The translations under genes were made by a program, and so were the position numbers. The notes beneath the pieces are model-generated. The model was not told the DNA's origin, searched no databases, and saw nothing but the letters and a program-made list of their open reading frames with translations. Below are positions 572 to 55,266 of a stretch of 64,000 nucleotides of DNA, piece after piece (the stretch's first letter is position 1; each line of letters begins with the position of its first letter). The stretch covers positions 1-64,000 of the IMG/VR virus record IMGVR_UViG_3300007352_000001, one strand, 5' to 3'.

Positions 572-898
572 ATGAGCCCACGGCGGACGGACCACGTCAG
601 CCTCTCTGATCCGGACTGGGTCGAGTACGTCTGCCGGAACACTGTCGGCCTGATGTTCTGCGACGCCTGCGGGCAGCAGCTCATCAACTACGCTGCAACG
701 CTTGGGCACAAGGGGCGGATCCAGCTGATCGGCATGACGAGAGGTCATGCACTGCTTGCACACCACGCGGCGCATAACCGGAGCCCACCGGCAACGCTCA
801 GTGTCCACGTTGCCGGTGGGGCGGTCCTGTGGGAATCAGGGCAACCGTGGCGGCGGGTTGGCTTCGCTAGCCGCCCCGGCGTCCCTGGGGTGGACTGA
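572..898 (+). CDS. hypothetical protein with CxxC and C-terminal VLWESG...RVGFASR module
   Basis: ATG at 572 inside the 440..898 ORF; CDAC; C-terminal module also found in 6130..6834. Confidence 0.55.
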   Translation: MSPRRTDHVSLSDPDWVEYVCRNTVGLMFCDACGQQLINYAATLGHKGRIQLIGMTRGHALLAHHAAHNRSPPATLSVHVAGGAVLWESGQPWRRVGFASRPGVPGVD

Positions 899-899
899 C

Positions 900-2564
900 T
901 TAGCTCTCCTCGTCGAGCTGCGCGCCGTTGCTGCGGCGCCGGGTGCCACTGCGCGCGGCGATGAACGCCCCGCTGCGCTCGATCAGCTCGGTGATACCGT
1001 CTCTGTGGCGCTCATCGAGCCGGCCGTCGCTGAACGCTGCCTGTGCTCCGCGCTGCAGCGCCGCGATGAGGTACGGCCCCGCGAAGGCCATGAACTCCTC
1101 GAACGGGTTGAACTCGTCCTTGCGCATCCGATCTTCCATGATCTGGCGGTGCTGCAGCATGGAGTCGGCGGCGACCAGGAGGTCGGTCGCGTTGACGAGC
1201 AGCGGCTGGTCGTCCTGGACGTAGCGAATCGCCGAGAGCTTCGCGCGCGTGATGATCTCGGAGATCATGGCCGGGATGATGCCGGTCAACCGCTCGCCGA
1301 CCTCGGTGAGGTCCGCGTCATCGGCGATGAGGCCGGCGCCGTAGGTGCGCACGAGGCGAATGGCTGCCTCGGCGTCCGGCGGCTCGATCTCGATGATGTC
1401 GTCGAAGCGGCCGGGGCGCAGCGCCGCCTCGTGGATCAGGTCGATGTTGTTGGTGGTGAGCACGGTGACGACCTTCGTGCCCTTCGAGCCGACGCCGTCC
1501 ATGATCTCCAGCAGCTGGTTGCCGTCGTCGTCGCGCTCTTCCATGTCGCGGTCGATGTCCTCGAAGAACACCATCGCCGGCTGGTACTGCTGCGCGAACT
1601 GCAGCGCCTTGGCCAGGTTGTCGCGGGCGTAGATGAACGTCCACCCGTGCTCGACCGCGATGATCGCCGCCTTGTAGGCGGTCATGGTCTTGCCGGTGCC
1701 GTAGGTGCCGTGCAGCAGCACGCCGCGCTTCAGGCCGACGCCCTCGCGCTCGCAGCGCGCGGTGTTGCGCAGCACGGTGAAGAGCGAGGCGTCGATGCGG
1801 TCCTCGATCCGCGTCGGCAGGACGAGGTGGGCGGGGTTGATGCCCTTCAGGTCGAGGAACTGCGGCCGGCGCATGATGTCGCGCTTCCTCGGGTCCGGGT
1901 CCTCGACGAACGAGATCTGGATCGCCCGGCCGCGGTAGATGCTGTTGCGCTGCAGCTCGATCGCCACCAGGTCGGCGATCGCCTTCACGATCGCAGCGTC
2001 GACGCGCTTGAACGAGCCCGAGAGCACGAACACGGTGCGGTCGGGCTTGATGGCGAGGCTCGTCTGCAGGACGGCCGTCGTGTCGGGCAGCTTGAACTTG
2101 CCCCAGATGACGTCACGCGTCTCGGTCGGGCTGACCTCGACGCCGACCGACGCGTTCTGGTTCTCCCACCAGAAGGCCTTCTCGGTCGAGGTGTAGCCGA
2201 ACTCGCGCTGGAGCACGGCCGCGAGCGCGTGCGCCCCGTCGTACGGGTGCGCGTTGTACTCGCGGTTGATCTCCAGCTCCTCGTCGTCGAGGTGCAGCCG
2301 GCGCGTGAGGATCTCGATGCCGGTCGCGTACGACATCCCTTCGGGCAGCGTGACGATCTTCTTGTCGGTCTGCGTGAACTGCACGTCGGTGTGCCCCGCA
2401 TCCGCTTCCGCCTGGAGATCCTCCAAGAGGGCCTGCAAGACGGCGCCTTTGCGGCGCGACTTGAACACGGCCCCGACGTCGGGCATGCCCTCCACGCCCT
2501 CGGCGCCGTCCATGCTCTCCATGGCACGTACCATCATCGGCTTCTTCCGTGCTGCTGTTGCCAT
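900..2564 (-). CDS. AAA+ ATPase (classical AAA clade)
   Basis: Walker A HGTYGTGKT, Walker B MVFFEDID, SRH TTNNIDLIHEAALRPGRFD; ATG at 2564 with purine-rich RBS. Confidence 0.92.
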   Translation of the reverse strand: MATAARKKPMMVRAMESMDGAEGVEGMPDVGAVFKSRRKGAVLQALLEDLQAEADAGHTDVQFTQTDKKIVTLPEGMSYATGIEILTRRLHLDDEELEINREYNAHPYDGAHALAAVLQREFGYTSTEKAFWWENQNASVGVEVSPTETRDVIWGKFKLPDTTAVLQTSLAIKPDRTVFVLSGSFKRVDAAIVKAIADLVAIELQRNSIYRGRAIQISFVEDPDPRKRDIMRRPQFLDLKGINPAHLVLPTRIEDRIDASLFTVLRNTARCEREGVGLKRGVLLHGTYGTGKTMTAYKAAIIAVEHGWTFIYARDNLAKALQFAQQYQPAMVFFEDIDRDMEERDDDGNQLLEIMDGVGSKGTKVVTVLTTNNIDLIHEAALRPGRFDDIIEIEPPDAEAAIRLVRTYGAGLIADDADLTEVGERLTGIIPAMISEIITRAKLSAIRYVQDDQPLLVNATDLLVAADSMLQHRQIMEDRMRKDEFNPFEEFMAFAGPYLIAALQRGAQAAFSDGRLDERHRDGITELIERSGAFIAARSGTRRRSNGAQLDEES

Positions 2565-2619
2565 TCGTTTCCCACCTTTCACCACAGGATAAGGCTCCCA
2601 GCCCCATGCCGGGAGACGG

Positions 2620-2997
2620 TTACGCGGCTGCGTCCTGAGACCGCACGATCGCGATGGCGAAGCCCGCGTCGCGTAGTGCGGCAATGATGTCGTCCGCTGA
2701 GCGCTTGCGCGCGTAGTTCACCTGCAAGAGCGCCCGCGTCGCTGCGTCCTGGCTGAGGATGTCGCCGCCGGTCTCGACCTGCTCGGCGGGGGCCTCGGTC
2801 GCGAGCCACTTGCTGCCCGACTCCCCCACCACGAGCTTGCTGCTGCAGAGCAGCCGGTTGTACTGCCGCACCCGCTCGATGATCTTCGTTTCTGTCTGCT
2901 GCGCGTGCTTGGGACAGAACTGCGGCGGGATGTCCGAGTAGATCGCGTAGACCGCGTGCGCGGTGCAGCCGTTGTAGCAGCAGGTGTACGTGGTCAC
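2620..2997 (-). CDS. small Cys/His zinc-finger-like hypothetical protein
   Basis: GTG overlaps the stop of the upstream gene (GTGA); CCYNGC...FCPKH. Confidence 0.55.
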   Translation of the reverse strand: MTTYTCCYNGCTAHAVYAIYSDIPPQFCPKHAQQTETKIIERVRQYNRLLCSSKLVVGESGSKWLATEAPAEQVETGGDILSQDAATRALLQVNYARKRSADDIIAALRDAGFAIAIVRSQDAAA

Positions 2998-4246: not shown

Positions 4247-4295
4247 GGTTGATGCCGCCCACGTCCTGCGCGATAACCAGGGGCTGGAGGTGGTG

Positions 4296-6133: not shown

Positions 6134-6834
6134 GGGTGTCGTTCACGACATCATGGCCGATCACCACGAAGTCGGCGGCGGCGAACTACATGGCGCAAGC
6201 GCTGCGGGCCGAAGAGGACCTGAGCCTGTTCCAGCGTGGACTGCAGTTCTGGCTCACGCTCGGTAGTCCGTACAAGTCCACGCGCATGCCGACCATCACG
6301 CCGATCCAACGCGGCAGCACCGTCACGCCCGACGCGATCGAACAGTTCATCCGGCACGTCGAGTGCACCAAGGGTCAAGAGCGCCTCGCCGATGATGAGC
6401 CGTACGGCAACGCCACCAAGCCCAGTACGCCGCGCGCGTCGGCGGGGACGGTGGACCTGCGCGAGTGTGCCGGACCCAACCCGACGATCGCGATCCGCAT
6501 CGAGCACGGCCCCGTCTTGTGGGAGACCGGCTGGTACGAAGGCCGCGTCGGCTACACGAGCCGCAAAGAGCACCGGTGGGACAAAGGACTCACTGGGGAA
6601 GACGTCAGAGTCTCGCGCCGCCGGCAAGGGGTGGTCTACAACTTCGCGTGCCCCTCGTGCAGCGCTCCGGCCGATCCTTGCCAGACGCTTCGCAACGGTG
6701 GGCACCAGGGCGCGTGCATGAACCGGCACCTCTACCAGGTCTGTCGTCTGCACTTGCGGGCCGAGGCCGGCCACTCGATCACCGAGTTCGATGCGGACAC
6801 GTGCTCGTGCTGGATGCCGCGGCGCTACGCGTGA
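6130..6834 (+). CDS. hypothetical protein with C-terminal Cys/His cluster and VLWETG...GRVGYTSR module
   Basis: GTGA overlap; CPSC..C..C..C..H..C.C. Confidence 0.55.
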   Translation: MRVSFTTSWPITTKSAAANYMAQALRAEEDLSLFQRGLQFWLTLGSPYKSTRMPTITPIQRGSTVTPDAIEQFIRHVECTKGQERLADDEPYGNATKPSTPRASAGTVDLRECAGPNPTIAIRIEHGPVLWETGWYEGRVGYTSRKEHRWDKGLTGEDVRVSRRRQGVVYNFACPSCSAPADPCQTLRNGGHQGACMNRHLYQVCRLHLRAEAGHSITEFDADTCSCWMPRRYA

Positions 6835-7803: not shown

Positions 7804-8613
7804 ATGATACCGCGCGGACGCGCCGGCTACGAGTCGACCCCACGCCCCACGCCAGAAGGCAAAGCGGTGCGGCGCTTCGGCGCTCGGATGGCGAAGACCG
7901 ACCGGTGGGCAAACAAGCCCAGCAACAAGGTCGCCTATCAGTACGGCGACGGGATGGCGAAGCACTTCGAGCGGCCGGCACCCTACTTCCAGCATCAGCC
8001 GACCGGCCTCTACGTCCAGCAGCATTCCACGGTGATGGGCACCGACACGCGCCTGACCGGTGACGTGCAGTACTCGGTGCCGGGCATGGGACGCCTCGCG
8101 GTGATCAAACACGACGAGCTGCGTCCCGCCCCGCATGGCATGGACGTGCTGGCGGCGGCTCGGCACAACCGCACGATGACGCGTGGCGCGAAGTGGCCGG
8201 GGCCGGTTGGCCGGCTGGACTATCTCACGCGCAAGCACGAAGGGATCAACGTGCGCTGGGACGACATCCTCGCCGAGGCGTTGAAGAAGTCCTCACCGCT
8301 GCTCGGCAAGACCACCAACATGTTCGGGCCGACCTCGCAGAGCCCCGATGTCCACCAGCGCCTGCGCGCGGTCCTCAGCAACCCGACGCACGACACCTGG
8401 GACAACGCCCACGGCATCGTCGTCTCGCAACATGGAGGCCTCGGCGGCACGACCCTCTGGCAAGCGGTGCTGGCGGTCGACCCGAGCTTCCCGAACGTCG
8501 GTCCCCGGTCCGATGCGTCTGGTCGACGGTTGAAGGGGTGGGATCGAATCCCGGATCAAATGACGTTGGCGCGAGCGATCAAGCACGCCACGTCGCTCAA
8601 GCCGCGGCGCTAG
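7804..8613 (+). CDS. two-domain hypothetical protein
   Basis: AAGGAG RBS; N-terminal IPRGRAGYES; internal WDDILAEA linker. Confidence 0.65.
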   Translation: MIPRGRAGYESTPRPTPEGKAVRRFGARMAKTDRWANKPSNKVAYQYGDGMAKHFERPAPYFQHQPTGLYVQQHSTVMGTDTRLTGDVQYSVPGMGRLAVIKHDELRPAPHGMDVLAAARHNRTMTRGAKWPGPVGRLDYLTRKHEGINVRWDDILAEALKKSSPLLGKTTNMFGPTSQSPDVHQRLRAVLSNPTHDTWDNAHGIVVSQHGGLGGTTLWQAVLAVDPSFPNVGPRSDASGRRLKGWDRIPDQMTLARAIKHATSLKPRR

Positions 8614-19180: not shown

Positions 19181-19184
19181 TCCG

Positions 19185-19421
19185 GTGACCACGGAGCTGA
19201 AACGGAGCCGGTGCACGGTGCCTACCACCATCCACACCACCGCAGGCCAGTGCCACTTCGTCATGATCCCTGGCGGGTTCGTCGCCATCGTCCCTGGCCG
19301 GGTGGGTTGGTACTCGGTGCACTCTCGACAGTGCCCGGAGCCCACCGTGGATGAGCCGAACCGAGCCAGCCGATTCGCCCACGTCGACCGCGTTAGTCGC
19401 CGACTCGCCCGCAAGCGCTGA
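19185..19421 (+). CDS. small hypothetical protein with GRVGWYS motif
   Basis: GTG just after the upstream stop; motif at 19296. Confidence 0.4.
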   Translation: MTTELKRSRCTVPTTIHTTAGQCHFVMIPGGFVAIVPGRVGWYSVHSRQCPEPTVDEPNRASRFAHVDRVSRRLARKR

Positions 19422-24427: not shown

Positions 24428-24862
24428 ATGCCCGCCGCTGACGATCTCCAGGACTCACTCTCCACGACCAAGCGGTTGATGGAAGAGTTCGGGTTCACCA
24501 AAGAAGAGGTCCGGCAGCACTTCGAGAACGTGCAGGCGGACATGCAGCGCATGGGTGAGTCGAACGGGGAGCTTGCGGAGGCCGCTCGCTACCTCGTCGA
24601 CGAACTGCGGAAGGCGTACCCCAAGCGGGTCGGCGACTTCTCGCAGCACGGCCCCGCGTTGCCGGACGACCAGTTGCGGAAGGGGCGAGGGGATGGCGGG
24701 GCGGTACGACTGGTACAGCATTCCGAAGACGATCATTTACCACAACAACTGCCCGGACGGATTCACCGCCGCCTGGGTCGCTCACTCGAAGTTTGGCGAC
24801 CACGACGTCCAGTTCCACCCAGCCAACTTCGGCGAACCGCCGCCCGACGTCGCTGGCCATGA
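24428..24862 (+). CDS. hypothetical protein carrying the RVGDFSQHGPA tag
   Basis: Helical N-terminus; motif at about 24626; 3' part overlaps the DHH gene. Confidence 0.55.
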   Translation: MPAADDLQDSLSTTKRLMEEFGFTKEEVRQHFENVQADMQRMGESNGELAEAARYLVDELRKAYPKRVGDFSQHGPALPDDQLRKGRGDGGAVRLVQHSEDDHLPQQLPGRIHRRLGRSLEVWRPRRPVPPSQLRRTAARRRWP

Positions 24863-40470: not shown

Positions 40471-41729
40471 CGAATCCTCTCCGCGCGGTTGTGGATGCGA
40501 TCGCCAAGGACTACACGGCGTACTCGACCGGCGACGTCGACCGGATCAGCGGCGTGATTCGTCAACGGCTGGAGCGCACCCATCCGCACTTGGTGAGCGG
40601 GGCCACGAGCGGTTCTGTCGATGTGCACGTGCATGACCACTTCCGTGAGCGCGACGCGCGCCACCGCCGGCAGTTCTATCGCGAGGAGTTCGAGGGTATG
40701 GTGAGCCCGATCTGGGAAGGTGTGCTCAGCGAGATGCCGATCATCGGCGGGACCAGCTACAGCGACCATCCGCACCCCGAGGTGTACACGCACCTGGAGA
40801 ACGCGCGCCTGCGCGGCACGCGGCTGAAGATCACCTACGGCGACGTGAAGACTGGCCGTTCGTGGGAAGATCCCAGCGAGACCGAGCAGCTGAAGCGCCG
40901 GCCTGGCTGGATCCGCGCCTACGGCGCCCTCGGCAAGATCGGTCGGTCGATGGGACCGACGAAGATCCCTCTGGAGATCCCCACCGCGCGCTCGATGGGT
41001 GGCGGTGGGTTGCTCGTCAGCAACATCGTCAAGATCGAGCACGCCAACAAGAAGCACGGTGGTCTGATCTGGCAGCACCCCAAGTACCATGTCGGCAGCA
41101 ATCGCGTCGGCGACGCCAGCGCGGGCGGACCGCCAACGTCGGTGGGCGAAGCGATCCTACAGCGCATCATGTACGCACACGAGGACGTGCGCGACGTGAT
41201 CGAACAGCTGACGCGTCCCGACCTCGACGAGGCTGAGAAGCCGGCCGCGCGGTTGATCGACAGCGTGCGTCCGCACGATCGCGTCACCTATCTGATCCAC
41301 GCCGGCACCGGCCGCAACGGGCCGGAGTGGAAGCAGCACACCGGCCGGGTCGTCATGGTGAAGCCGAGCGGGCACGATCACCTGGTCGTCAACGGTGGTG
41401 GGCGCCACGGGACACCGCACGTGGTCACGCACGACACGCTGCTGAAGGTGCACACGCGCAAGGTCGACGGGCCGAGGCCGTTACCAGCCACTGCCAAGCG
41501 CGACCCACACGGCTTCAGCGAAGCCAAGGTGCGCGACACGGCCAACGAGCTGGGCTGCGAGCACTGCGGTGGGCGGGCGAAGTTCTCCTACGGCACCGCC
41601 GGCAAGATGCACTACGCGTGCACCACGCCAACATGTGGCAAGATCACCAGCAAGCGCGTGCTCGGGAGCGCAGGCGCGACCGCGGACCCGTACGGCTCGC
41701 GCTTCCTCGTCCCACCGTCGCGCCGATGA
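40467..41729 (+). CDS. His-rich multidomain protein carrying both the RVG tag and the helical tag
   Basis: RVGDASAGGPP at 41103 followed by GEAILQRIM..EDVRDVIE; SH3-like and zinc-ribbon modules. Confidence 0.7.
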   Translation: MTNPLRAVVDAIAKDYTAYSTGDVDRISGVIRQRLERTHPHLVSGATSGSVDVHVHDHFRERDARHRRQFYREEFEGMVSPIWEGVLSEMPIIGGTSYSDHPHPEVYTHLENARLRGTRLKITYGDVKTGRSWEDPSETEQLKRRPGWIRAYGALGKIGRSMGPTKIPLEIPTARSMGGGGLLVSNIVKIEHANKKHGGLIWQHPKYHVGSNRVGDASAGGPPTSVGEAILQRIMYAHEDVRDVIEQLTRPDLDEAEKPAARLIDSVRPHDRVTYLIHAGTGRNGPEWKQHTGRVVMVKPSGHDHLVVNGGGRHGTPHVVTHDTLLKVHTRKVDGPRPLPATAKRDPHGFSEAKVRDTANELGCEHCGGRAKFSYGTAGKMHYACTTPTCGKITSKRVLGSAGATADPYGSRFLVPPSRR

Positions 41730-44550: not shown

Positions 44551-45107
44551 TGTACACGCCCCAGGGCCTCACCTGGGTCTCGGCAGGCCAGCGTGATGCC
44601 CAAGGGCGCCTGCGCCGCGGCACGGTGCCGTGGGATTCCGTGAAGCCGATTCGGTACAAGAACCCGATCGGCCCCCACACCACCGCTGTGCGGCACACGA
44701 TCTTGATCCGCGATCATCACTTCGGTGGTCCTACCGGGACACCTAACACGCTCGGGTTCGGCGGGAGCCTTGGCCCGGTGACGCGCAAGGACATTGGCCG
44801 AACCCTCACCGTCGACAAGCTGCCTGACGGGCGGTGGATCGACCACATCAGCACGGAGAAAGCTGTGGCACAAACCCGAGTTGGTGACGCGAGTCGCCGT
44901 GGTTCCGATTGGAAGAAGCGCAACGAGGCAGTCGAAGAGAACTTCGGCGCGATCTATCACCACCACTTCGCCGTCCCGGCCACGGGCATCTCGGCGCAGC
45001 GGCCGTGGTCGCGTCAGGACTTTCGCGACTACTACCAACAGCACCCCGATCTGCCGCAGCTCGTCGGTGACGAACTCGCAGAGCAGATCCGGAAGGTCTT
45101 CGAGTAA
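44550..45107 (+). CDS. hypothetical protein with RVGDASRRG motif
   Basis: TGATG coupling; motif at 44877. Confidence 0.6.
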   Translation: MYTPQGLTWVSAGQRDAQGRLRRGTVPWDSVKPIRYKNPIGPHTTAVRHTILIRDHHFGGPTGTPNTLGFGGSLGPVTRKDIGRTLTVDKLPDGRWIDHISTEKAVAQTRVGDASRRGSDWKKRNEAVEENFGAIYHHHFAVPATGISAQRPWSRQDFRDYYQQHPDLPQLVGDELAEQIRKVFE

Positions 45108-45124: not shown

Positions 45125-47773
45125 ATGAGCATGAGCAACTGGTACACGGACCGCCTGAACGACGTGTCGGCGATTCGCCAGGCACACTACGGGCGCACCG
45201 ATCACGGCCGGCCGTTTCAGGTGAACGAGTCGGTGCAGCTCACCGCACGTGTGGTCACTGAGAGCGCAACGCTGCCACCCTACATCACCGGCCGCGTCAC
45301 GTCGCTCGATGAACACGGCGTGACGGTCGACTTCAGTGGCTACGGCAAGCAGCGTCTCGGCGAGGCCGTCGCGCGCGACTTCCTGGTCGGCTACCGGAAC
45401 CACACCCCGGTCGACGTCCTGTCGCGCATGATGGGCAAGGGGCCGAACAAGCTCCACGAGTTCAAGGTTGGCGACACGGTCACCGACCGCCACGGGGCGG
45501 CGTTGGTGATCGAGCGCATCGACCCGAACACGCAGACGGCGATGCTGACCGACGGCTCGCACCTCTACCCGCGGCCGATCCGCGAGTTGAAGCTGGCGGG
45601 AGGCGGCGCCGCGATCGGCGGCGGCAAGGTGGTCGCCGAGCGTGGCAAGCAGGGCAACGGCAAGCAAGGCACTCTGCAGGAAGAGGGCGAGCGCCAGACC
45701 GTTGGGTCCGACGGGATCGCGCCAGGCACGAAGGTGCGCGTCACGAGCATCGACCCGATGTTCAACCAGTGGCGCCGGTTCGCTGTGCAGCAAGGCGAAG
45801 CGGAAGGCATCGTCGGCCAGGAAGGCACCGTGATCGCCGCGATGTACCCGACGGGCGTCGGGGCCGGTGGGCAGTCGCAGGGCGAGACGATGTACCGCGT
45901 ACTCTTCCCGTTCGGCGGCAAGAAGGACCTCTCGGCGAAGGAACTCGCCATGGGGGGAATGGGCGGTGACGGCCTCGTTCGCGAGTCCGTGAACCGGGGG
46001 TTGCTTCGGCGCCCCGGCCAGCGCCCGATCGACGAATCGCTCCTAGAGGAAGGATCGGCGTTCAGTCGCCGGCACTACGAGCGCATCGCGGACCTGATCC
46101 GCGAGTCGAGCATCCCCGAGAACGATCGACACGAGATCGTGCAGAGCTTCGGCCGCACGTTCATGAACGACAATCCCTACTACGACCACGCGCGGTTCGC
46201 CTCGCGCGTGCACAACGACATGGAAGGGGCCGGTCGGCAGTCGCGCCAGGGCATCACGGCGACGCCGACGCAGCGCCACTTCGTCGAGGTGGCGCGCACG
46301 CTGCGCGAGGCGCACATCAACCAGGACTCGCGCAACAAGCTGGTCCAGGCGTTCGGTCGGCACTTCAGCGGCCTCAACGAGCGCTACAAGCACCACGTCT
46401 TCCACAAAGCCGCTGGTGGGGTCGGGGATCCGATGGCCGGGCTGCACGAGGCCGGTGGGGTGACCCAAGGCTCAGTCATTCGCCAGCCGAAGCCGGTGAC
46501 CGACAAGTCGGTCAAGGCGGCGACCAAGCCGCGGGCAATGGCGTCGAAGATCGGGCAGACCGTCAAGACCGGCGGCACGGGCGGGGTCGTGGTCGGCGAA
46601 GAGAAGGGGCTGCTCAAGGTGCTGACCGACGATGGGCGGCAGGTCTTCGTCAACGAGTCGGTGCTGATGGCGCCGGCCGGTGGCCAGGCTCGCTGGACCC
46701 CTCCGCAGACCGAGTACAACGCGCCGCCCATCGCGCTCGCGGTCGGCTCGACCATCAACTTCGATGGCCGCTCGGGCGTCGTGGTCGAGGCCGGTCCCGC
46801 CTCGTGCCGCGTCCTGATGGACAACGGTGAGGACCTCCGTGTCGCCACCCGCTCGCTCGCCCTCGCCGAGGGTGAGAAGCCGGCGTTCTTGAAGGACAAG
46901 GACGACGACAACGACGACTCGGGTTCCAAGAAGAAGGACGAGAAGTCGGGGTCCAAGGACAAGTCCGGCTCCAAGGACAAGGACGACGACGAAGACGAGG
47001 ATGAGGACGACGACAAGAAGGACGAGAGCGTCGGCATGATGGCGCCGCAGTCGATGGGCCTCACCGCACCGTCGCTCGCACGTCCGGCTGGCGCCGCCCA
47101 AGCCCTCGAAGGTCAGACGATCGACGTCGCTGGGCAGCCGGCGATGATCCTCGGATTCACCAAGTTCAACCAGGCCGGGCAACCGACCGAGGCCCGCGTC
47201 GCCTACGAAGGCGGCAAGGAAGGGCTCGTCACGCTCGCAGAGAAGCGCGTGGACGAGTCGATGCAACTCGCCAAAGGGCTGACTCGCCGGCTCATGCGGG
47301 CGGACAACGCTGCGCGTGTGAGCGCGCAGAGCGGCACGGTCGACCGCCAGGTCGCCCAGGTCGCCGCCCGTCTGCGCCCAGTCAGCGAGAACAACCATCG
47401 CGCCCGCGCGGTCGACCTCGACCAGAGCAACGCGCTGGCGATGTCCGCGATCCAGCCGAACGGCCAGATCGTGAACCCGGAGATGGCCCAAGCGCTCGCC
47501 ATGGTGCAAACCAAGCTCGGCAACTCGCCGGCCGTCAAGCAGGCGGAAGGTGTCCTCGCTGGCGTGCGCCAGCCGGGCGCGGCATCGCCCAAGGCGATGA
47601 GCGAGGAGCAACTCAGCGAGGAGCGTCGCCGCGCGCTCACACGCGGCCTCGTGCGCAGCGTGAAGGAAGGCAAGGGCTTCAGCCCCTCGCGGCCGATCGT
47701 CACCTCGACGGGCACGGCCGTCACCGAAGACGTGCTCGCCGGGGCGCAGTTTGTCCCGAACACCGAGATCTGA
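45125..47773 (+). CDS. large multi-module protein (several KOW/SH3-like barrels, a duplicated helical domain, many hydrophobic-x-E sites); candidate prohead-core polyprotein
   Basis: GGAGG RBS; FKVGDTV, IAPGTKVRV, KIGQTV, LAVGSTI, LEGQTI starts; VNES/VTES/VRES/IDES/VDES; D/K-rich stretch. Confidence 0.75.
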   Translation: MSMSNWYTDRLNDVSAIRQAHYGRTDHGRPFQVNESVQLTARVVTESATLPPYITGRVTSLDEHGVTVDFSGYGKQRLGEAVARDFLVGYRNHTPVDVLSRMMGKGPNKLHEFKVGDTVTDRHGAALVIERIDPNTQTAMLTDGSHLYPRPIRELKLAGGGAAIGGGKVVAERGKQGNGKQGTLQEEGERQTVGSDGIAPGTKVRVTSIDPMFNQWRRFAVQQGEAEGIVGQEGTVIAAMYPTGVGAGGQSQGETMYRVLFPFGGKKDLSAKELAMGGMGGDGLVRESVNRGLLRRPGQRPIDESLLEEGSAFSRRHYERIADLIRESSIPENDRHEIVQSFGRTFMNDNPYYDHARFASRVHNDMEGAGRQSRQGITATPTQRHFVEVARTLREAHINQDSRNKLVQAFGRHFSGLNERYKHHVFHKAAGGVGDPMAGLHEAGGVTQGSVIRQPKPVTDKSVKAATKPRAMASKIGQTVKTGGTGGVVVGEEKGLLKVLTDDGRQVFVNESVLMAPAGGQARWTPPQTEYNAPPIALAVGSTINFDGRSGVVVEAGPASCRVLMDNGEDLRVATRSLALAEGEKPAFLKDKDDDNDDSGSKKKDEKSGSKDKSGSKDKDDDEDEDEDDDKKDESVGMMAPQSMGLTAPSLARPAGAAQALEGQTIDVAGQPAMILGFTKFNQAGQPTEARVAYEGGKEGLVTLAEKRVDESMQLAKGLTRRLMRADNAARVSAQSGTVDRQVAQVAARLRPVSENNHRARAVDLDQSNALAMSAIQPNGQIVNPEMAQALAMVQTKLGNSPAVKQAEGVLAGVRQPGAASPKAMSEEQLSEERRRALTRGLVRSVKEGKGFSPSRPIVTSTGTAVTEDVLAGAQFVPNTEI

Positions 47774-49163: not shown

Positions 49164-49241
49164 CGGGGTGTAGGGCAGCCAGGCCAGCCCACCTGCCTTG
49201 GGAGCAGGTTGCCGCAGGTTCAAATCCTGCCACCCCGACCA
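49164..49241 (+). tRNA. tRNA-Pro(TGG), CCA encoded
   Basis: Acceptor CGGGGTG/CACCCCG; anticodon arm CCTGC-CTTGGGA-GCAGG; GGTTCAAATCC T-arm. Confidence 0.93.
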
Positions 49242-50330: not shown

Positions 50331-50555
50331 ATGGGTGAGGGTGGGGACTTTTCCTTTGTCGATCTAGGAGAGCAGTGCACCAGCGACCGCGCGCTGGCGA
50401 TCCGGTTCCTCTGGGAGAGCATGCAGGCCGGCCTCATGCAGCTAGACGAAGTGCGCGCCGGCCTCGACCTCCCACTGATCGGGCAGCCGCCTGGCCGTGT
50501 TGGTGACTTCTCGAAGAGCGGTCCAGCGCCGCTCAGCTTGCCAGGATACTGCTGA
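50331..50555 (+). CDS. tag-array protein 1 (tail GRVGDFSKSGPAPLSLPGYC)
   Basis: Shared C-terminal motif; TGATG coupling. Confidence 0.7.
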   Translation: MGEGGDFSFVDLGEQCTSDRALAIRFLWESMQAGLMQLDEVRAGLDLPLIGQPPGRVGDFSKSGPAPLSLPGYC

Positions 50556-50905
50556 TGCTCACGCGCAAGCGTCTGCTCGCCGCGGTGAAGTACCCGACCC
50601 GGTACGATGACCGCTGGCGTGAAGAGAGCTGGCCGGTCATCCGGTTCACGACCGACCAGATGTCCGAGCTGAAGCTAGGGGATCGCATCAGTGTCGACGT
50701 CGGCAAGGCGAGACAGAGCCGCATCTACGTCGTCGACTCGATCACGCACACCCCCGAGGGCGGGACCAACATCAGTGCCCACATGCCGATTCTCGGCGAC
50801 GCACCAGGTGAGAAGACCTACGACGTCTTGCTCGGGCCACCGAAAGGGCGTGTCGGGTTCTTCTCGAACGACGGCCCCGCGCCGAAGACTGCGAGCTGTC
50901 CGTGA
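50555..50905 (+). CDS. tag-array protein 2 (tail GRVGFFSNDGPAPKTASCP)
   Basis: Shared C-terminal motif. Confidence 0.75.
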   Translation: MLTRKRLLAAVKYPTRYDDRWREESWPVIRFTTDQMSELKLGDRISVDVGKARQSRIYVVDSITHTPEGGTNISAHMPILGDAPGEKTYDVLLGPPKGRVGFFSNDGPAPKTASCP

Positions 50906-51139
50906 ATGGGCGATCGCCTTCCAGATTTCTTCCACAACGGCACGTTCGACTTCGAGCCGCTGACGCGGCATCTCGACGAACTCGGTTGGCAGACCGAGGC
51001 CGCAATGCGTCAGTTCGCGCGATTGGCGGCGCTCGCTTTCCGTATTCCCGAGGAGTACCTCGTGCCGCCGATCCCGACTGGGAGAGTGGGGTCGTACTCG
51101 GAGGGTGGACCAGCGGCGCGCACAGCACTGCGGCCATGA
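50906..51139 (+). CDS. tag-array protein 3 (tail GRVGSYSEGGPAARTALRP)
   Basis: Shared motif; ATG directly after the previous stop. Confidence 0.75.
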   Translation: MGDRLPDFFHNGTFDFEPLTRHLDELGWQTEAAMRQFARLAALAFRIPEEYLVPPIPTGRVGSYSEGGPAARTALRP

Positions 51140-51366
51140 TCCCGAAGGGCGAGAAGCCGTTGACGCGCAACCAGCAACGCATCGTCAACGCGCTGAAGGT
51201 CATCGGTGAGAAGGGCCTCCTCGATCATCCAGTAGAAGATTTGACCGAGAGCGAAGACGTGCGCAGAGCTGTGGCAGTGCTCAAGAAGTTCTTGGTGCCG
51301 AAGAACGGCCGCGTCGGGTACTACTCGCAGCACGGACCGGCGAAGTCGACGAGTCGCTTCCCATGA
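51136..51366 (+). CDS. tag-array protein 4 (tail GRVGYYSQHGPAKSTSRFP)
   Basis: Shared motif; ATGA coupling. Confidence 0.75.
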   Translation: MIPKGEKPLTRNQQRIVNALKVIGEKGLLDHPVEDLTESEDVRRAVAVLKKFLVPKNGRVGYYSQHGPAKSTSRFP

Positions 51367-51635
51367 GCGGCAGCGGACCGGTGATGACGTGCGTCCAGTG
51401 CGGGAAGATCGGTCTGTTCCTACGCTCGGACAACCTCTGCGATCACTGCTGGAAGCAGCTCATGCACGCTCGTAACTACGGGATGACCGGCAGGCAGTTC
51501 CGAGACATCATCGAGGCGAGCCACATCGCGATGCCGGCGCCGATCCCTGACTGGATCACGGTGCTATTCCCAGCGGGGCGCGTCGGCTTCTTCTCGCAGT
51601 TCGGGCCGGCGCTGCGTACCGACACGCACCCATGA
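51363..51635 (+). CDS. tag-array protein 5, zinc ribbon (tail GRVGFFSQFGPALRTDTHP)
   Basis: CVQC...CDHC; shared motif; ATGA coupling. Confidence 0.75.
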   Translation: MSGSGPVMTCVQCGKIGLFLRSDNLCDHCWKQLMHARNYGMTGRQFRDIIEASHIAMPAPIPDWITVLFPAGRVGFFSQFGPALRTDTHP

Positions 51636-51904
51636 AAGACGCCCCGCCACCGAAAGGGGTCGTCTGGGTCGACCGGGAGGGCGTCCGCGTCCAGAACATC
51701 GAGGACTTCGAGTGGTACCGTGAGCACATCGAGAAGCCGCTGAAGGCTCTCATGGAACGCTCCGGCCAAGAGGTCATCCCCCTACGTGGATGGACGTTCA
51801 CGCCGGACGGCAAGTGGGCGATCAGCAAGAAGCTCCCTGTGCACGGAAGCGCCGGTTCCTATTCGATCAACGGTCCGGCAGACTCGACGAAGACATGTCC
51901 TTGA
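51632..51904 (+). CDS. tag-array protein 6 (tail GSAGSYSINGPADSTKTCP)
   Basis: Shared motif variant; ATGA coupling. Confidence 0.72.
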   Translation: MKDAPPPKGVVWVDREGVRVQNIEDFEWYREHIEKPLKALMERSGQEVIPLRGWTFTPDGKWAISKKLPVHGSAGSYSINGPADSTKTCP

Positions 51905-52194
51905 TCGACGAGTTCCCAGCCTTGCGCGGCTGGTACAAGATCACGCCACAGGCGGTCGAGTTGCGTGGCCGGGGAATCTCGCCGCTTGCGCCGATACATG
52001 TGTGTACCGGTCCGCCGGTGATCGAGTGCCAGTTTGACGACGATCGCTTGAAGCTCGAAGAATACCTGCGCCGGCAGATGAACGAGGAAGCCTGGCGGCT
52101 CGACATGCAGCTGCGACACTTCCGTGGGCGGCTAGGAAGCGTCGGCTCGTTTTCGCTCCAAGGACCTGCGCCGCGAACGGAGAACTACCCGTGA
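51895..52194 (+). CDS. tag-array protein 7 (tail GSVGSFSLQGPAPRTENYP)
   Basis: Shared motif variant; 10-nt overlap. Confidence 0.72.
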   Translation: MSLIDEFPALRGWYKITPQAVELRGRGISPLAPIHVCTGPPVIECQFDDDRLKLEEYLRRQMNEEAWRLDMQLRHFRGRLGSVGSFSLQGPAPRTENYP

Positions 52195-52379
52195 TGGACT
52201 CTGGGACGACCTATAAGCGTGGCCCTGCCCGCACCGGTGGTGAACAAGACGTGATCTCGCGCCGCTGGCGCAAGATGCTCTGCTACTGCGTCCGCACGGG
52301 CGTCACGGCGAAGATCAAGCGCGGCATCCGCCGCCGCGAACGCCGCGAGGGGCGGCACGAGGCACAGAGCGAATGGTAA
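52194..52379 (+). CDS. small basic hypothetical protein
   Basis: TGATG coupling; Arg-rich. Confidence 0.55.
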   Translation: MDSGTTYKRGPARTGGEQDVISRRWRKMLCYCVRTGVTAKIKRGIRRRERREGRHEAQSEW

Positions 52380-52966
52380 ACGAACGCTTCTTCGATCGCT
52401 CCGGGCCAGATGGGCTCGAAGGTGGGCAGGGCGGGGTCGCTGGCGGCTCTCCTAACTCCGAGTTCTCCGGTGGTGGCGCGAACAGCCAAGCCGGTCGTTG
52501 TCCGAGCTGCAACGCCAACTTCCCAGTCGACGATCCGAACCGGACGACGTTCTGCCCTGAGTGCGGGCAGCAGCGGCAGGGCGTGGTGGCGACGGCGGCA
52601 GCCCAGCAGCGCGGCGGGTGGGGCGTCTACGGCACTGGCCGGCCGGGCTATCTGCGTGTACCGGGCGGGCCGATCTCGACCAATGAAATGGCCGGCAAGC
52701 TCCGGCTCAAGTATCTCGGCGGCAATCTCTTCGAGATGGAGATGCAGGGCGCGACGCTCGAACACGCGCTCTCATCGTCGCACTCGGTGATGTCGCATCG
52801 CCTGCGGGCTCTTGGTATGAACCAGGATCGCGTGATGCAGACGCTGATCCACTGGCTCTTCAACGAGGCCAAGGCGGGACAGGAGTACGTGTGGGATCTC
52901 GCAGGCGGCACGCGTATGGTGGTCGACGAACGCGGTTTTCGTCGCCACGTCGAAGTTTCGGAATAA
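52373..52966 (+). CDS. zinc-ribbon hypothetical protein
   Basis: CPSC...CPECG. Confidence 0.65.
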   Translation: MVNERFFDRSGPDGLEGGQGGVAGGSPNSEFSGGGANSQAGRCPSCNANFPVDDPNRTTFCPECGQQRQGVVATAAAQQRGGWGVYGTGRPGYLRVPGGPISTNEMAGKLRLKYLGGNLFEMEMQGATLEHALSSSHSVMSHRLRALGMNQDRVMQTLIHWLFNEAKAGQEYVWDLAGGTRMVVDERGFRRHVEVSE

Positions 52967-53199
52967 CCGACGACTTCGACGACGTCCCGGAGTTGAACAG
53001 CCTCCCGAAGCTCGACATCGAGTTCGCCCCGCCGGTGAAGCGCCGCTCGCGGCGACTCGACGGCTGGACGCACCAAGACAGACCCTTGCGTGTCGAGGGC
53101 GTCGCCCCACCAGCAATCGACCGGCGCAAGCCGTTGCGCCGCGGACAAGTCGGCTACGCCTCGCGTGGCCGGCGCAAGAGGACGATCGACGATGCGTGA
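52963..53199 (+). CDS. small protein with GQVGYASR motif; apparent ATA start
   Basis: In-frame ATA overlaps the upstream TAA (ATAA); fills the gap exactly. Confidence 0.4.
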   Translation: MTDDFDDVPELNSLPKLDIEFAPPVKRRSRRLDGWTHQDRPLRVEGVAPPAIDRRKPLRRGQVGYASRGRRKRTIDDA

Positions 53200-53707
53200 T
53201 GTCTCCGCGGCGATCAGTGCGATTCTCGACGGCGCGGCCGTGCCGGTGATCGCCGAGGCGATGATGCGCATGGGCATGGGTGCCCCGCCGCCGGTCAACA
53301 CCGGCGCCACCGGCGAAGCCGAGGATCGCAAGCACGCCGCGTGGATCGAGCCCAACGGCCGTACGCACGTGCTCGGCAGGGAAGAGATTCACGGCGACTG
53401 GGCCACGGCACGGCCCGAGATGTGGCCCAAGCGAGCGTACGCGGTCTACCGCGCCGCGGCCGGCCGCGGCGACGACACCTACCACGACGAATCGCGGCAA
53501 ATGAGCCGCATGATGAAGGCCGGGTGGGTGCGCAAGGCTGGCGCCGCCGCGTACCACGTCCACGCCCGCGAGCAGATCCCACGGGTCCTCGCCCACGTGC
53601 GCCGCTGGCATCCAGACGTCGACGAGTTCCATGTCGACGTCGGCTCGCCGAAGATCAAGACGACGGTCACGATGAACGCGCACACCGGGTGGCCGGTGCG
53701 GAGGTAG
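53192..53707 (+). CDS. helical tag plus W-x-x-P-x-G domain protein
   Basis: AAISAILDGAAVPVIAEA; AWIEPNG...H..W...AGWVRK. Confidence 0.7.
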   Translation: MRDVSAAISAILDGAAVPVIAEAMMRMGMGAPPPVNTGATGEAEDRKHAAWIEPNGRTHVLGREEIHGDWATARPEMWPKRAYAVYRAAAGRGDDTYHDESRQMSRMMKAGWVRKAGAAAYHVHAREQIPRVLAHVRRWHPDVDEFHVDVGSPKIKTTVTMNAHTGWPVRR

Positions 53708-53715
53708 ACTGACTC

Positions 53716-55266
53716 ATGCCCATGGACGCTTCGCCCTACCAAGCTCAAGGACCGGGTGACCCGAGCGCAGGCGCGGGGCCTCCGGCGTCGCAGAATCCGC
53801 CGCCGCCAGGCCCACCACAGGTCCCTGGGGCGCCGGATCCGCGCATGCAGCCGTTTGGGCAGCAGGCGTCGCCCGGCAACTTCCTGCAGCAGATCCGACA
53901 GTTCTCGGCGGACTGTGCCCAGGTCGAAGAGATCGTCACCGAGCTGCAGAAGCTCCTGCTGCAGATCAAGATGTCGATGCCGCCCGATCGCGTCGAGGCC
54001 ACGACCCAGGCGATGGGGCAGCTGCTCGCGGCGCAGTCTGGGCTCACCGGTGCTCGCATGGTGCTGGAGATGGCCACGATGCCGCAGCAGCAAGCCGGTG
54101 CCGGCGGTGGCGGTGTGCGAGAGGACAAGACGCCCGAGCCGACGACGTTCACCGCGCTTGTCGAACAGGCGGGCAAAGCAAAGTTCGGCCTGCCTCATGC
54201 GCCGCGGCGCTACACCTGCCAGGACTGCGGCCAAGAGCAGAAGATCTCGACCAACCACACCGACGACGTATCGGACTACTGCCGCGGCTGTTCGTGGAAG
54301 CCGTCGTTCGGCAAGACGGGCCACAACATCCCCGCGCTCGGTGGGCATACCTACCGCCGCTTCTCCTACGTCGGTGAACTGAAGGAATCCGCCGATGACA
54401 TCGAGCGCACGCTCGGGGTTGGTCGCTACGCTCGGCCGCAGACCGCCGCTGATCGCAAGCTCATCCGCGACTTCCTGGCGCCGAACACGACGGCAACGGC
54501 AGATGCATGGGCACGCCGGCCGGCCGGTCCGGTGACCACGCACGCCCGCTCGCCGTTCCAGCTGTCGATCCAGAAGACCGCCCTCGGGAAGAAAGGCGGC
54601 GTGCACGAAGCGCTCGCGACGACCTCGCACCACATGAGCGGGGGCGGTGGCACCGCGACGCAGACGCTCACCATCCCTGAGCGCGAGTACCAGATCCGCG
54701 AGTTCACTGACGGGCCGGTCACCCGTTACGAGCTGTCGCGCATCGGCAATGACCTACGGGCGCAGGTGCCGATCTACGTGTTCCATGACCAGAAGACCGG
54801 CGCGTGGAAGTCGACGCTTTTCCAGGAAGACGACGGAGGCGGCGATCGCCACGCCGAGCTGGTGAAGCGCTGGCTCTTCCAGGGCCGGCCGGCACGCATC
54901 ACCGACGCCATGGAACCGGTTGGCGGCTCGCCGCCAGCGTGGCCGTTCATGGACAACGACGGCTACGAGCGGCCAGGCTTCCACTCGACCCAGCGGCCGG
55001 TGGGAATCCCCGATCCAGGTCCGGGCCAGGGGCACTATGCCGAGTCGTCGTTCGGCGCGCTTGTTGACGAGACCAAGCGGTTCTCGAAGAGCGAGGTGGT
55101 GGCGTCGCTGCGCCAGCACGCACAGGACATCCGCGACGGCAAGATCAAGACGCGCTCGCCGAACGATGAGCCGCACACCATCATTGGCCCCGACGGCAAG
55201 CCGCACATCCCTCGTGGCCGTGTCGGGGCTGCCTCGCGCGTGCGCGTGAAGAAAGGCCGCGTATGA
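53716..55266 (+). CDS. multi-module protein (Pro/Gln-rich N-terminus, zinc ribbon, FxALV[DE] linkers, C-terminal GRVGAASR)
   Basis: GGAGG RBS; CQDC...CRGC; VRED, LKES, VHEA linkers. Confidence 0.7.
   Translation: MPMDASPYQAQGPGDPSAGAGPPASQNPPPPGPPQVPGAPDPRMQPFGQQASPGNFLQQIRQFSADCAQVEEIVTELQKLLLQIKMSMPPDRVEATTQAMGQLLAAQSGLTGARMVLEMATMPQQQAGAGGGGVREDKTPEPTTFTALVEQAGKAKFGLPHAPRRYTCQDCGQEQKISTNHTDDVSDYCRGCSWKPSFGKTGHNIPALGGHTYRRFSYVGELKESADDIERTLGVGRYARPQTAADRKLIRDFLAPNTTATADAWARRPAGPVTTHARSPFQLSIQKTALGKKGGVHEALATTSHHMSGGGGTATQTLTIPEREYQIREFTDGPVTRYELSRIGNDLRAQVPIYVFHDQKTGAWKSTLFQEDDGGGDRHAELVKRWLFQGRPARITDAMEPVGGSPPAWPFMDNDGYERPGFHSTQRPVGIPDPGPGQGHYAESSFGALVDETKRFSKSEVVASLRQHAQDIRDGKIKTRSPNDEPHTIIGPDGKPHIPRGRVGAASRVRVKKGRV

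What the first reader, a model, noticed from the sequence alone, without database searches (positions are those of the whole stretch)
854..55236. The RVG-x-x-S core recurs on about nine more unrelated proteins across the window
Seen, all in the coding frame: RVGFASRPG (854), GRVGYTSR (6541), GRAGYES (7816), GRVGWYS (19296), KRVGDFSQHGPA (24623), RVGDASAGGPP (41103), RVGDASRRG (44877), GQVGYASR (53143) and GRVGAASR (55216). Four keep the Gly three residues after Ser, two of them as GP. Several lie near protein termini or in linkers. A rough composition estimate gives about one chance RVGxxS in this much coding sequence; 12 exact copies are seen counting the array. Inference: a genome-wide short linear motif of which the 50.3-52.2 kb array is the full form.
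Basis: partly seen in the sequence, partly recalled or inferred. Interest (0 to 1): 0.8.

Follow-up and report, generated by a model that had tools for sequence, protein, structure and literature searches.

The report
Shared peptide tag on phage proteins
An uncultivated 241-kb phage carries one short peptide signal (core R-V-G-x-x-S) at the ends or domain junctions of many otherwise unrelated proteins, including an operon of seven small genes. It is most likely a common docking tag, and nothing like its full form exists elsewhere in public sequence data.

Summary
All nine peptides are at the stated coordinates. Outside the array, exact RVG..S occurs 5 times in frame in well-supported genes, against 0.5 expected. 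None of 2000 residue shuffles reached that count, the five other reading frames show no excess, and 47 permuted patterns reach at most 2. Two sites (854, 19296) lie in ORFs with marginal coding support, two are inexact (RAG, QVG), and two are paralogous.

The window is bases 1-64000 of a novel 66% GC myophage with a T4-like capsid protein. The array is seven translationally coupled small genes. Their N-terminal parts show no detectable similarity, but all end in the same 19-20 residue tail. An eighth full copy lies at 24.6 kb. A profile search of 1.84 billion proteins found this tail nowhere else.

The short core is older than the array. Three related phages carry [RQK][VI]GD[VA]S at three conserved places in the two large proteins that flank the array (3 observed, 0.012 expected).

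The motif is not genome-wide. The next 44 kb, which encodes tail and baseplate genes, has no copy.

The motif sits at C-termini or module junctions, after proline-rich linkers, with synonymous codon variation at conserved residues. The best reading is a shared docking or targeting peptide, analogous to the T4 capsid targeting sequence or encapsulin targeting peptides. No receptor was identified.

The parts
50331..52194 (+). Array of seven small genes, with ATGA/GTGA stop-start overlaps: a1 50331-50555, a2 50555-50905, a3 50906-51139, a4 51136-51366, a5 51363-51635, a6 51632-51904, a7 51895-52194. Each protein has a different N-terminal part and the same C-terminal tail.
   Evidence: ORFs and overlaps. 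The JGI calls give the same seven genes of 74, 116, 77, 76, 90, 90 and 99 aa. The N-terminal parts show no significant similarity. There are no Pfam or PHROG hits, no Rfam family and no + strand terminator inside the array.
50493..50552 (+). Full tail of a1 (GRVGDFSKSGPA plus 8 aa)
50846..50902 (+). Full tail of a2 (GRVGFFSNDGPA plus 7 aa ending in P)
   Evidence: In the AF2 single-sequence model, residues 77-116 are the least confident part.
51080..51136 (+). Full tail of a3 (GRVGSYSEGGPA plus 7 aa ending in P); Arg is coded AGA
51307..51363 (+). Full tail of a4 (GRVGYYSQHGPA plus 7 aa ending in P)
51576..51632 (+). Full tail of a5 (GRVGFFSQFGPA plus 7 aa ending in P); the N-terminal part has a CxxC...CxxC zinc ribbon
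51845..51901 (+). Full tail of a6 (GSAGSYSINGPA plus 7 aa ending in P)
52135..52191 (+). Full tail of a7 (GSVGSFSLQGPA plus 7 aa ending in P)
24428..24679 (+). Eighth full-form copy: a small ORF whose tail KRVGDFSQHGPA lies at 24623-24658. There is no stop after the tail, so the frame runs on to 24862, out of frame through the start of the DHH/DHHA1 gene (24693-25520).
   Evidence: Codon scores are +19.6 for 24428-24679 and -34 for the run-on. Profile score 50.8 bits.
55216..55236 (+). Short copy GRVGAAS, 15 aa (counted from the R) before the C-terminus of the 516/473-aa protein (53716/53845-55266). Homologues in relatives carry the motif at or near their C-termini: two end exactly in ..VGDVSR or ..VGDASR, one has ..RIGDVSGG 14 aa before its end, and a 38% GC relative has ..YIGDVIG.
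53143..53163 (+). Short copy GQVGYAS, 17 aa (counted from the Q) before the stop of a 68-aa ORF (52993-53199). Coding signal in this frame starts directly after the stop of gene 52373-52966.
44877..44894 (+). Short copy RVGDAS at residue 110 of the 185-aa protein 44550-45107, at the junction between an N-terminal module unique to this phage and a C-terminal part that is a separate gene start in relative L024.
41103..41120 (+). Copy RVGDAS(AGGPP), directly after the end of the conserved N-terminal domain of protein 40491-41729, at the start of a lineage-specific insertion.
6541..6561 (+). Copy GRVGYTS inside protein 6136-6834. It is part of a 30-aa segment paralogous to the 854 ORF.
854..871 (+). 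Copy RVGFAS, 14 aa (counted from the R) before the stop of ORF 533-898. Coding status is doubtful.
   Evidence: JGI did not call this ORF.
7816..7836 (+). Inexact copy GRAGYES at residues 5-11 of protein 7804-8613, whose N-terminus reads MIPRGRAGYES.
19296..19316 (+). Copy GRVGWYS in an uncalled small ORF in the gap 19180-19653, possibly starting at MIPGG. Coding status is doubtful. It is the best in-window hit to the tail profile outside the eight full copies (9.5 bits).
45125..47773 (+). The 882-aa protein that flanks the array upstream. In relatives its homologue carries E[KR][VI]GDVS in a disordered linker. In this phage that copy has degenerated to GGVGDPMAG.

Best explanation
This is a lineage-specific short linear peptide signal. 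Its core is [RQK]-[VI]-G-x-(hydrophobic or Ala)-S, usually preceded by a Pro-rich stretch. It is kept by selection on the protein and sits at C-termini or module junctions of otherwise unrelated phage proteins.

The short core is ancestral in this phage clade. It occurs on the two large proteins that flank the array, the 882-aa and 516-aa families. In this phage it has spread in three ways:
- a translationally coupled operon of seven small genes with no detectable similarity between their N-terminal parts, each ending in an extended tail, G[RS][VA]Gx[FY]SxxGPAx[KRS]TxxxP-COOH;
- an eighth full copy at 24.6 kb;
- several short copies.

Inferred mechanism: the peptide is a docking tag that brings many different cargo proteins to one common receptor. 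The most likely purpose is incorporation into the prohead or virion, possibly followed by trimming. That would make it a functional analogue of the T4 capsid targeting sequence on the diverse T-even internal proteins, and of the C-terminal targeting peptides that load cargo into HK97-fold encapsulin shells.

Shown: the recurrence, the protein-level conservation, the position at termini and junctions, the conservation in relatives, and the uniqueness of the long tail. Inferred: that it binds something, and what it binds.
For: Enrichment:
- In-frame enrichment with clean off-frame, shuffle and permutation controls.
- In a related phage, [RQK][VI]GD[VA]S occurs 3 times against 0.012 expected. The same three positions recur in a second relative, and two of them in a third, short contig.

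Protein-level selection:
- Synonymous codon variation at every conserved residue.
- DNA identity of the array repeats is only 62-78%.

Diverse carriers:
- The N-terminal parts are unrelated, with no Pfam or PHROG family.

Position:
- The sites lie at C-termini or junctions.
- They sit in disorder-prone context, at a median around the 89th percentile of the proteome.
- The tail is the least confident part of the a2 model (a weak model).

Genomic context:
- The phage has a T4-like capsid protein and an S77 prohead protease fused to a scaffold-like coiled coil.
- The array lies between the head-tail adaptor and the tail terminator.
- An InPase-domain protein of the kind predicted to be packaged into virions, and a paralogue of its C-terminal domain, lie nearby (PMC5512222).

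Precedents:
- T-even internal proteins are diverse and share only a capsid targeting sequence (PMC3012670).
- Encapsulin targeting peptides such as TVGSLRR and GSLxIGSLK are short, C-terminal and follow linkers (PMC10960027).
- No copy occurs on tail or baseplate proteins, which fits a head or non-tail destination.
Against: - No receptor is known. The one complex prediction (capsid protein, scaffold part and a2 tail) gave 'no answer' and counts neither way.
- Several carriers (533-898, 6136-6834, 7804-8613, 24428, and the copy 4.7 kb upstream of the window) lie among non-structural-looking genes.
- The T4 capsid targeting sequence is N-terminal and ends in a protease site. This motif is C-terminal or internal and has no L/I-x-E.
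- The full-tail profile does not recognise the short sites, so the long and short forms may not share a partner.
- The low-GC relative, whose capsid protein is 67% identical, keeps only IGDVI at one C-terminus.
Confidence: 0.4

Rival explanations
1. Processing site. The motif marks where a phage protease cuts fused modules apart or trims C-terminal propeptides, as in polyprotein or polyvalent-protein maturation.
For: - The motif lies at module junctions. In 44550-45107 it lies five residues upstream of the part aligned to a separate gene of relative L024.
- In 40491-41729 it follows the conserved domain directly.
- The internal site of the 516-aa family and the linker site of the 882-aa family fit the same pattern.
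- Two relatives' proteins end exactly at ..VGD[VA]SR, as if already cut.
- Polyvalent virion proteins are thought to be processed (PMC5512222).
Against: - The only protease seen is of the T4 gp21 type. The capsid protein keeps a T4-like L/M-[DT]-E site across relatives, whereas the motif has no conserved Glu.
- No other peptidase domain was found on the proteins scanned.
- A motif at the extreme C-terminus leaves nothing to remove.
Confidence: 0.15
2. The array is a real paralogous tail family, but the short RVGxxS sites elsewhere share no function with it. They reflect chance, local paralogy and a separate conserved C-terminal element of the 516-aa family.
For: - The tail profile separates the 8 full copies (41-57 bits) from everything else (10 bits or less).
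- The 854 and 6541 sites are paralogous.
- 854 and 19296 have doubtful coding status.
- There is no enrichment in the next 44 kb.
Against: - Even without the full copy at 24626 there are 4 in-frame hits against 0.5 expected (P about 0.002), and the off-frame controls are clean.
- The prefix is shared: P-x-I-P-x-G-R-V-G-x-x-S in both a3 and the 55216 site.
- RVGDAS at 41103 and 44877 is identical to the C-terminal motif of relative P0003.
- There is a further in-frame GRVGAWSIGG 4.7 kb upstream of the window.
Confidence: 0.2
3. Modification sequon. The conserved Ser is the acceptor for a phage-encoded modifying enzyme, by glycosylation or phosphorylation.
For: - Ser and the preceding Gly are the most constant residues.
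- The phage encodes a GT2 glycosyltransferase, a PMT_2-like GT-C enzyme, several methyltransferases and a weak dual-specificity phosphatase hit.
Against: - The low-GC relative has Ile in place of Ser at the conserved C-terminal site.
- The degenerate copy in the 882-aa protein lost Ser but kept VGD.
- GT-C enzymes act outside the cytoplasm (general knowledge).
- No kinase was seen.
Confidence: 0.1
4. Translational element. The nascent tail, at a fixed 18 codons before a Pro-UGA stop that overlaps the next start, modulates termination and reinitiation along the operon.
For: - The distance from R to the stop is exactly 18 codons in six of seven array genes.
- The last residue is Pro in six of seven.
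- All stops are TGA and overlap or abut the next start.
Against: - The short copies are internal, N-terminal, or at 14 to 17 codons (counted from the R or Q of the core) from a stop.
- The 24626 copy has no stop after it.
- The constant spacing is equally explained by common descent.
Confidence: 0.05
5. DNA-level element. The repeat is a recombination or cassette boundary that shuffles small ORFs, like the PeSL cassettes of T4-type phages.
For: The small ORFs look inserted relative to the relatives. L024 has one 93-aa gene where this phage has seven.
Against: - Third codon positions vary freely while the amino acids are kept.
- DNA identity is 62-78%, with no extended exact repeats or hairpins.
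- No Rfam match and no promoter or terminator pattern.
Confidence: 0.03

Closest known systems
T4-type capsid targeting sequence (CTS) on the internal proteins of T-even phages
   Same: A short terminal peptide is the only thing shared by a set of small, fast-evolving, otherwise unrelated phage proteins, some of them clustered in a variable locus. The phage has a T4-like capsid protein and an S77 prohead protease (PMC3012670).
   Different: The CTS is an N-terminal leader of about 10 aa that ends in a gp21 cleavage site. Here the signal is C-terminal or at junctions, has a different sequence and has no L/I-x-E. Packaging into the head has not been shown.
Family 1 encapsulin cargo targeting peptides (GSLxIGSLK, TVGSLRR and similar)
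   Same: Both are short C-terminal peptides that follow a flexible linker and occur on unrelated cargo. Both have a core of [VI]-G, small or hydrophobic residues, then a basic residue. The presumed receptor shell has the HK97 fold (PMC10960027).
   Different: The spacing and residues differ (V-G-D-V-S-R against V-G-S-L-R). There is no encapsulin operon. The shell here is a phage capsid with portal-based packaging. Binding is untested.
Short linear motifs (SLiMs) of viral and cellular proteins, in the ELM sense
   Same: The core has 4-6 constrained residues, lies in disorder-prone linkers or termini, recurs on non-homologous proteins and is conserved in orthologues.
   Different: No binding domain is known. 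Systematic SLiM use within a single phage proteome, with a dedicated gene array, is to my knowledge not a described pattern.
Polyvalent virion-packaged proteins of phages (Iyer et al. 2017)
   Same: There is an InPase-domain protein nearby, modules are fused and split differently between relatives, and the likely theme is delivering effectors with the DNA.
   Different: The motif carriers are mostly small single-module proteins. They have no MuF, portal or metallopeptidase domains.

Membership tests
T4-type CTS-bearing internal proteins | N-terminal leader of about 10 aa | tested here: not met
   The motif is C-terminal in the array and at 24626, 53143, 55216 and 854, and internal at 6541, 41103 and 44877. 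Only 7816, and possibly 19296, are N-terminal.
T4-type CTS-bearing internal proteins | The leader ends in a gp21 cleavage site (L/I-x-E) | tested here: not met
   There is no conserved Glu in or next to the motif in this phage. The capsid protein does keep L/M-[DT]-E.
T4-type CTS-bearing internal proteins | Shared signal on otherwise unrelated small proteins in a variable locus | tested here: met
   The N-terminal parts are unrelated. The array is absent from syntenic relative L024.
T4-type CTS-bearing internal proteins | The proteins are present in the prohead core or virion | not testable with these tools
   This needs virion proteomics. The complex prediction gave no answer.
Encapsulin Family 1 targeting peptide | Short C-terminal peptide after a flexible linker | tested here: met
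   The array tails and the C-termini of the 516-aa family follow Pro/Gly-rich stretches.
Encapsulin Family 1 targeting peptide | Consensus of the GSLxIGSLK or TVGSLRR type | tested here: not met
   The resemblance is limited to [VI]-G...[KR], and the spacing differs.
Encapsulin Family 1 targeting peptide | Cargo gene lies next to an encapsulin shell gene | tested here: not met
   The shell here is a Gp23-type phage capsid protein with a prohead protease.
Short linear motif (ELM sense) | Few fixed residues within 3-10 positions, recurring on non-homologous proteins above chance | tested here: met
Short linear motif (ELM sense) | Lies in accessible or disordered regions, not in folded cores | tested here: inconclusive
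   Supporting: junction or terminal positions, the TOP-IDP percentile and a low-confidence tail in a weak AF2 model. Against: the 854 and 6541 sites sit in a longer conserved segment. No reliable structures are available.
Short linear motif (ELM sense) | Conserved in orthologues | tested here: met
   The C-terminal and internal sites of the 516-aa family and the linker site of the 882-aa family are conserved in L024 and L025; L031, which does not cover the 882-aa gene, shows the two 516-aa-family sites.
Short linear motif (ELM sense) | Bound by a defined partner domain | not testable with these tools
S77 (T4 gp21) prohead protease substrates | Cleavage after Glu in L/I-x-E | tested here: not met
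RiPP precursor arrays | Conserved leader, variable core and adjacent modifying enzymes | tested here: not met
   The conserved part is C-terminal, the variable parts are 50-92 aa, and no RiPP enzymes appear among the neighbours.
Polyvalent proteins | Two or more effector domains in one polypeptide, often with MuF, portal or metallopeptidase domains | tested here: not met
   The motif carriers have no Pfam domains. InPase is on a neighbouring protein that lacks the motif.

The most novel reading that the evidence does not exclude
A tailed phage uses an encapsulin-like cargo-loading code. A short C-terminal peptide docks on the inner surface of the HK97-fold capsid, or on its scaffold, and loads a fast-evolving set of small effector proteins into the head for injection. 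The seven-gene array would be the hyperplastic effector locus, and the tail a transferable packaging tag.
Probability: 0.2. Interest if true: 0.8.

Novelty: new variant of a known kind. Interest (0 to 1): 0.6.

Why it matters
If the tail is a common docking or packaging tag, it defines a new sequence-readable way to find the delivered or recruited proteins of a whole uncultivated jumbo-phage clade. It would be a C-terminal counterpart of the T4 capsid targeting sequence and could serve as a portable tag for loading proteins into capsids. It would also link phage cargo loading with encapsulin cargo loading. Even if that is wrong, this is a clean case of a short linear motif evolving and multiplying within one phage proteome. 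The ancestral short form and the derived long form are both visible.

Tried and rejected
Searches and tests that gave nothing:
- Pfam and PHROG scans of the array proteins, the motif carriers and their neighbours found nothing informative.
- A profile of the 32-aa tail against 1.84 billion proteins found only the seven array proteins, plus one weak repetitive protein, P0011 (PPPGRVGFFQIRPEDRA repeats), which I judge unrelated.
- Back-translated motif patterns scanned against IMG/VR matched the phage's own contig only in the array. The 17 other single hits are non-coding, out of context or chance.
- Homologue searches for the 516-aa and 412-aa proteins found very few relatives.
- The metagenome scan with the 516-aa family found nothing. 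The scan with the sheath gave four loci.
- ESM Atlas look-alikes for the 516-aa and 882-aa proteins were uninformative.
- The complex prediction of capsid protein, scaffold C-terminal part and a2 tail gave 'no answer'.
- No sequencing run was listed for the array.
- The AF2 model of a2 without an alignment had a mean pLDDT of 42, so it is only weak support for a disordered tail.

Explanations considered and rejected:
- gp21-type cleavage site: no L/I-x-E.
- RiPP precursors.
- Sliding-clamp or SSB-tail mimicry: the sequences are unlike the known consensus motifs (from memory, not tested).
- DNA-level cassette boundary: the wobble positions vary freely.
- RNA element: no Rfam match.

I also noted a faint likeness between the motif and two capsid protein segments, SLGRVLSE in the propeptide and AIGDFQ at the mature N-terminus. 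It is too thin to use.

Full report
**What the window is.** The window is 66% GC throughout. It is bases 1-64000 of a 241,426-bp viral contig, IMGVR_UViG_3300007352_000001. The same genome occurs in a second sample as a circular permutation. It encodes a Gp23-type major capsid protein (36334-37860), an S77 prohead protease fused to a long coiled-coil region (34684-36294) and a tail sheath (59314-61068). It also encodes a gp15-like tail terminator, a tail-completion protein and a head-tail adaptor. The best capsid protein identity among deposited phages is 38%, so this is a novel jumbo myophage. Nearly all genes are on the + strand.

**The array.** Positions 50331-52194 hold seven small genes of 74-116 aa, with ATGA or GTGA stop-start overlaps. 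The public JGI gene calls give the same seven genes. Their N-terminal parts show no significant similarity to one another and match no Pfam or PHROG family. All seven end in the same tail, G[RS][VA]Gx[FY]SxxGPAx[KRS]TxxxP followed by TGA. An eighth full copy, KRVGDFSQHGPA, lies at 24623 in a small ORF with strong coding signal. That ORF has no stop after the tail and runs out of frame into the next gene.

At every conserved residue the codons vary synonymously. For example, Arg is CGT, CGC, CGG or AGA, and Pro is CCA, CCC, CCG or CCT. The repeats are only 62-78% identical as DNA. The constraint is therefore on the peptide, not the DNA. No RNA family and no internal + strand terminator were found.

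A profile of the tail searched against 1.84 billion representative proteins found only the seven array proteins and one weak, repetitive, apparently unrelated protein. A back-translated pattern finds the tail in the 241-kb contig only in the array, and nowhere convincing in IMG/VR.

**The nine extra sites.**
- Five (6541, 7816, 41103, 44877, 55216) are in frame in genes called both by me and by JGI.
- 24623 is the eighth full copy.
- 53143 is in a 68-aa ORF that JGI calls, with positive codon score.
- 854 and 19296 are in ORFs with marginal support that JGI does not call.
- The 854 and 6541 sites belong to a 30-aa paralogous segment.

**Statistics.** Outside the array, exact RVG..S occurs 5 times in frame in about 18,700 residues. 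Composition predicts 0.48 and residue shuffling 0.50. None of 2000 shuffles reached 5, and the Poisson P is 1.7e-4. The five other reading frames of the same genes hold 4 in total, against 5.0 expected. The other 47 permuted patterns of the same four residues reach at most 2; the mean over all 48 is 0.50.

**Out-of-sample test.** I walked along the contig in both directions. The next 44 kb (64-108 kb), which encodes tail tube, baseplate and fibre-like genes, has no in-frame RVG..S against about 0.35 expected (my estimate), and only two QVG..S. The 14.4 kb upstream of the window start has one in-frame GRVGAWSIGG, in a 197-aa protein. The motif is therefore real but regional, not genome-wide.

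**Relatives.** Syntenic relatives were found at 40-80% protein identity. They are a 36.8-kb Logan contig (L024, L029, L030), a 7.5-kb contig (L031) and a JGI contig (L025).
- None has the array. L024 has a single 93-aa gene at that position.
- All carry the short motif E[RQK][VI]GD[VA]S at up to three conserved places. One is a disordered linker of the homologue of the 882-aa protein. The other two, in the homologue of the 516-aa protein, are an internal site and a site at or near the C-terminus. The C-terminal site ends the protein exactly in two relatives..AEQVGDVSR and ..AERVGDASR. L031 does not cover the 882-aa gene.
- In the Logan relative this is 3 observed against 0.012 expected.
- A 38% GC relative keeps ..YIGDVIGNNG at the same C-terminus.
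- In this phage the copy in the 882-aa protein has decayed to GGVGDPMAG. The C-terminal copy of the 516-aa protein reads GRVGAAS.

So the short core is ancestral, and it sits on exactly the two large proteins that flank the array. The long tail and the array are elaborations of this phage. The two forms are linked by the shared core and by a shared prefix: P-x-I-P-x-G-R-V-G-x-x-S in both a3 and the 55216 site. However, the tail profile alone does not pick up the short sites.

**Position in proteins.** The motif is at a C-terminus or a module junction.
- In 44550-45107 it separates a phage-specific N-terminal module from a part that starts a separate gene in L024.
- In 40491-41729 it starts immediately after the domain shared with homologues P0013 and P0014.
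- In the 882-aa family it lies between a helical region and a Pro/Lys/Ala-rich linker.
- Local composition is disorder-prone, with a median around the 89th percentile. The tail is the least confident part of an admittedly poor AF2 model.
- Many carriers have zinc ribbons.

**Mechanism.** The data fit a short linear docking motif that ties diverse proteins to one receptor. The closest functional precedents are two. One is the T4 capsid targeting sequence, the only feature shared by the diverse T-even internal proteins (PMC3012670). The other is the C-terminal targeting peptides of encapsulin cargo (PMC10960027). Several points make head or virion targeting the most likely specific version:
- the capsid protein and S77 protease-scaffold are of T4 type;
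- the array lies between head and tail genes;
- there is a nearby InPase-domain protein of the kind predicted to be virion-packaged (PMC5512222);
- tail and baseplate proteins carry no copies.

This version is still inference. The one complex prediction allowed returned 'no answer'.

**Rivals.**
- A processing site fits the junction positions but has no matching protease specificity. The capsid protein keeps a T4-like L/M-[DT]-E site.
- A Ser modification sequon is weakened by Ser being replaced by Ile in one relative.
- A translational role for the tail does not cover the internal copies.
- A DNA cassette boundary is contradicted by the freely varying wobble positions.
- A null reading holds that only the array is a real family.

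**Verdict.** The motif is lineage-wide rather than genome-wide. Its long form is unique in public data, and its receptor and function remain to be found.

Noticed in passing
window 24428-24862 and 24693-25520: The eighth tail-bearing ORF has no stop after its tail. It reads about 60 codons out of frame into the DHH/DHHA1 phosphoesterase gene. The public gene caller instead places a 64-aa minus-strand gene at 24455-24649. This could be a lost stop, an assembly error or a frameshift fusion.
   Followed up: partly
window 52966-53199: Coding signal in frame 0 begins right after the stop of gene 52373-52966, but the first canonical start is TTG at 52993. The ORF may be a -1 frameshift extension of the conserved 197-aa protein or a separate 68-aa gene. 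No classical slippery heptamer was seen.
   Followed up: partly
window 61742-63313 (-), 16286-17161, 6992-7558, 15167-16286: A weak PMT_2-like GT-C glycosyltransferase hit, a GT2 glycosyltransferase and at least three class I methyltransferase paralogues suggest that the phage modifies a glycan or a surface structure.
   Followed up: no
window 20695-22344 and 53192-53707: An InPase-domain protein matches PHROGs annotated as DarB-like, minor head or virion proteins. Its C-terminal domain has a stand-alone paralogue (34% identity over 157 aa) just downstream of the array.
   Followed up: partly
L004/L026 (WSSedA1B3DRAFT_1000004) against the window: A relative with 37-38% GC has a capsid protein 67% identical to this 66% GC phage and shares synteny from the neck to the tail tube. 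That is an unusually large GC divergence within one phage lineage.
   Followed up: no
window 49164-49241 (+) and 58307-58592 (-): There are four tRNA genes. tRNA-Pro(TGG) lies next to a minus-strand HNH endonuclease gene (49243-49938) just upstream of the array. A Glu(TTC), Leu(GAG), Leu(CAA) cluster lies before the sheath gene.
   Followed up: no
window 34684-36294: The S77 prohead protease domain (residues about 31-187) is fused to a coiled-coil region of about 350 aa that looks like a scaffold. The capsid protein keeps a T4-like L/M-[DT]-E site at about residue 67 in this phage and in three relatives.
   Followed up: partly
window 7804, 19236 (approx.), 51136: Three ORFs begin with M-I-P-x-G: MIPRG, MIPGG and MIPKG. 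In two of them the RVG-type motif follows within 15 residues.
   Followed up: no
window 2994-3695 (-), 4296-4775 (+), 900-2564 (-): A haem-oxygenase-like protein, a weak dual-specificity phosphatase hit and a 554-aa classical AAA ATPase sit at the start of the window. The doubtful 533-898 ORF converges on the ATPase gene.
   Followed up: no
P0011 (database protein, 199 aa): This protein has four tandem repeats of about 26 aa containing PPPG[SR]VGFFQIRPEDRA. It is the only outside hit to the tail profile (E = 7e-4). It is probably a translated DNA repeat and unrelated.
   Followed up: no
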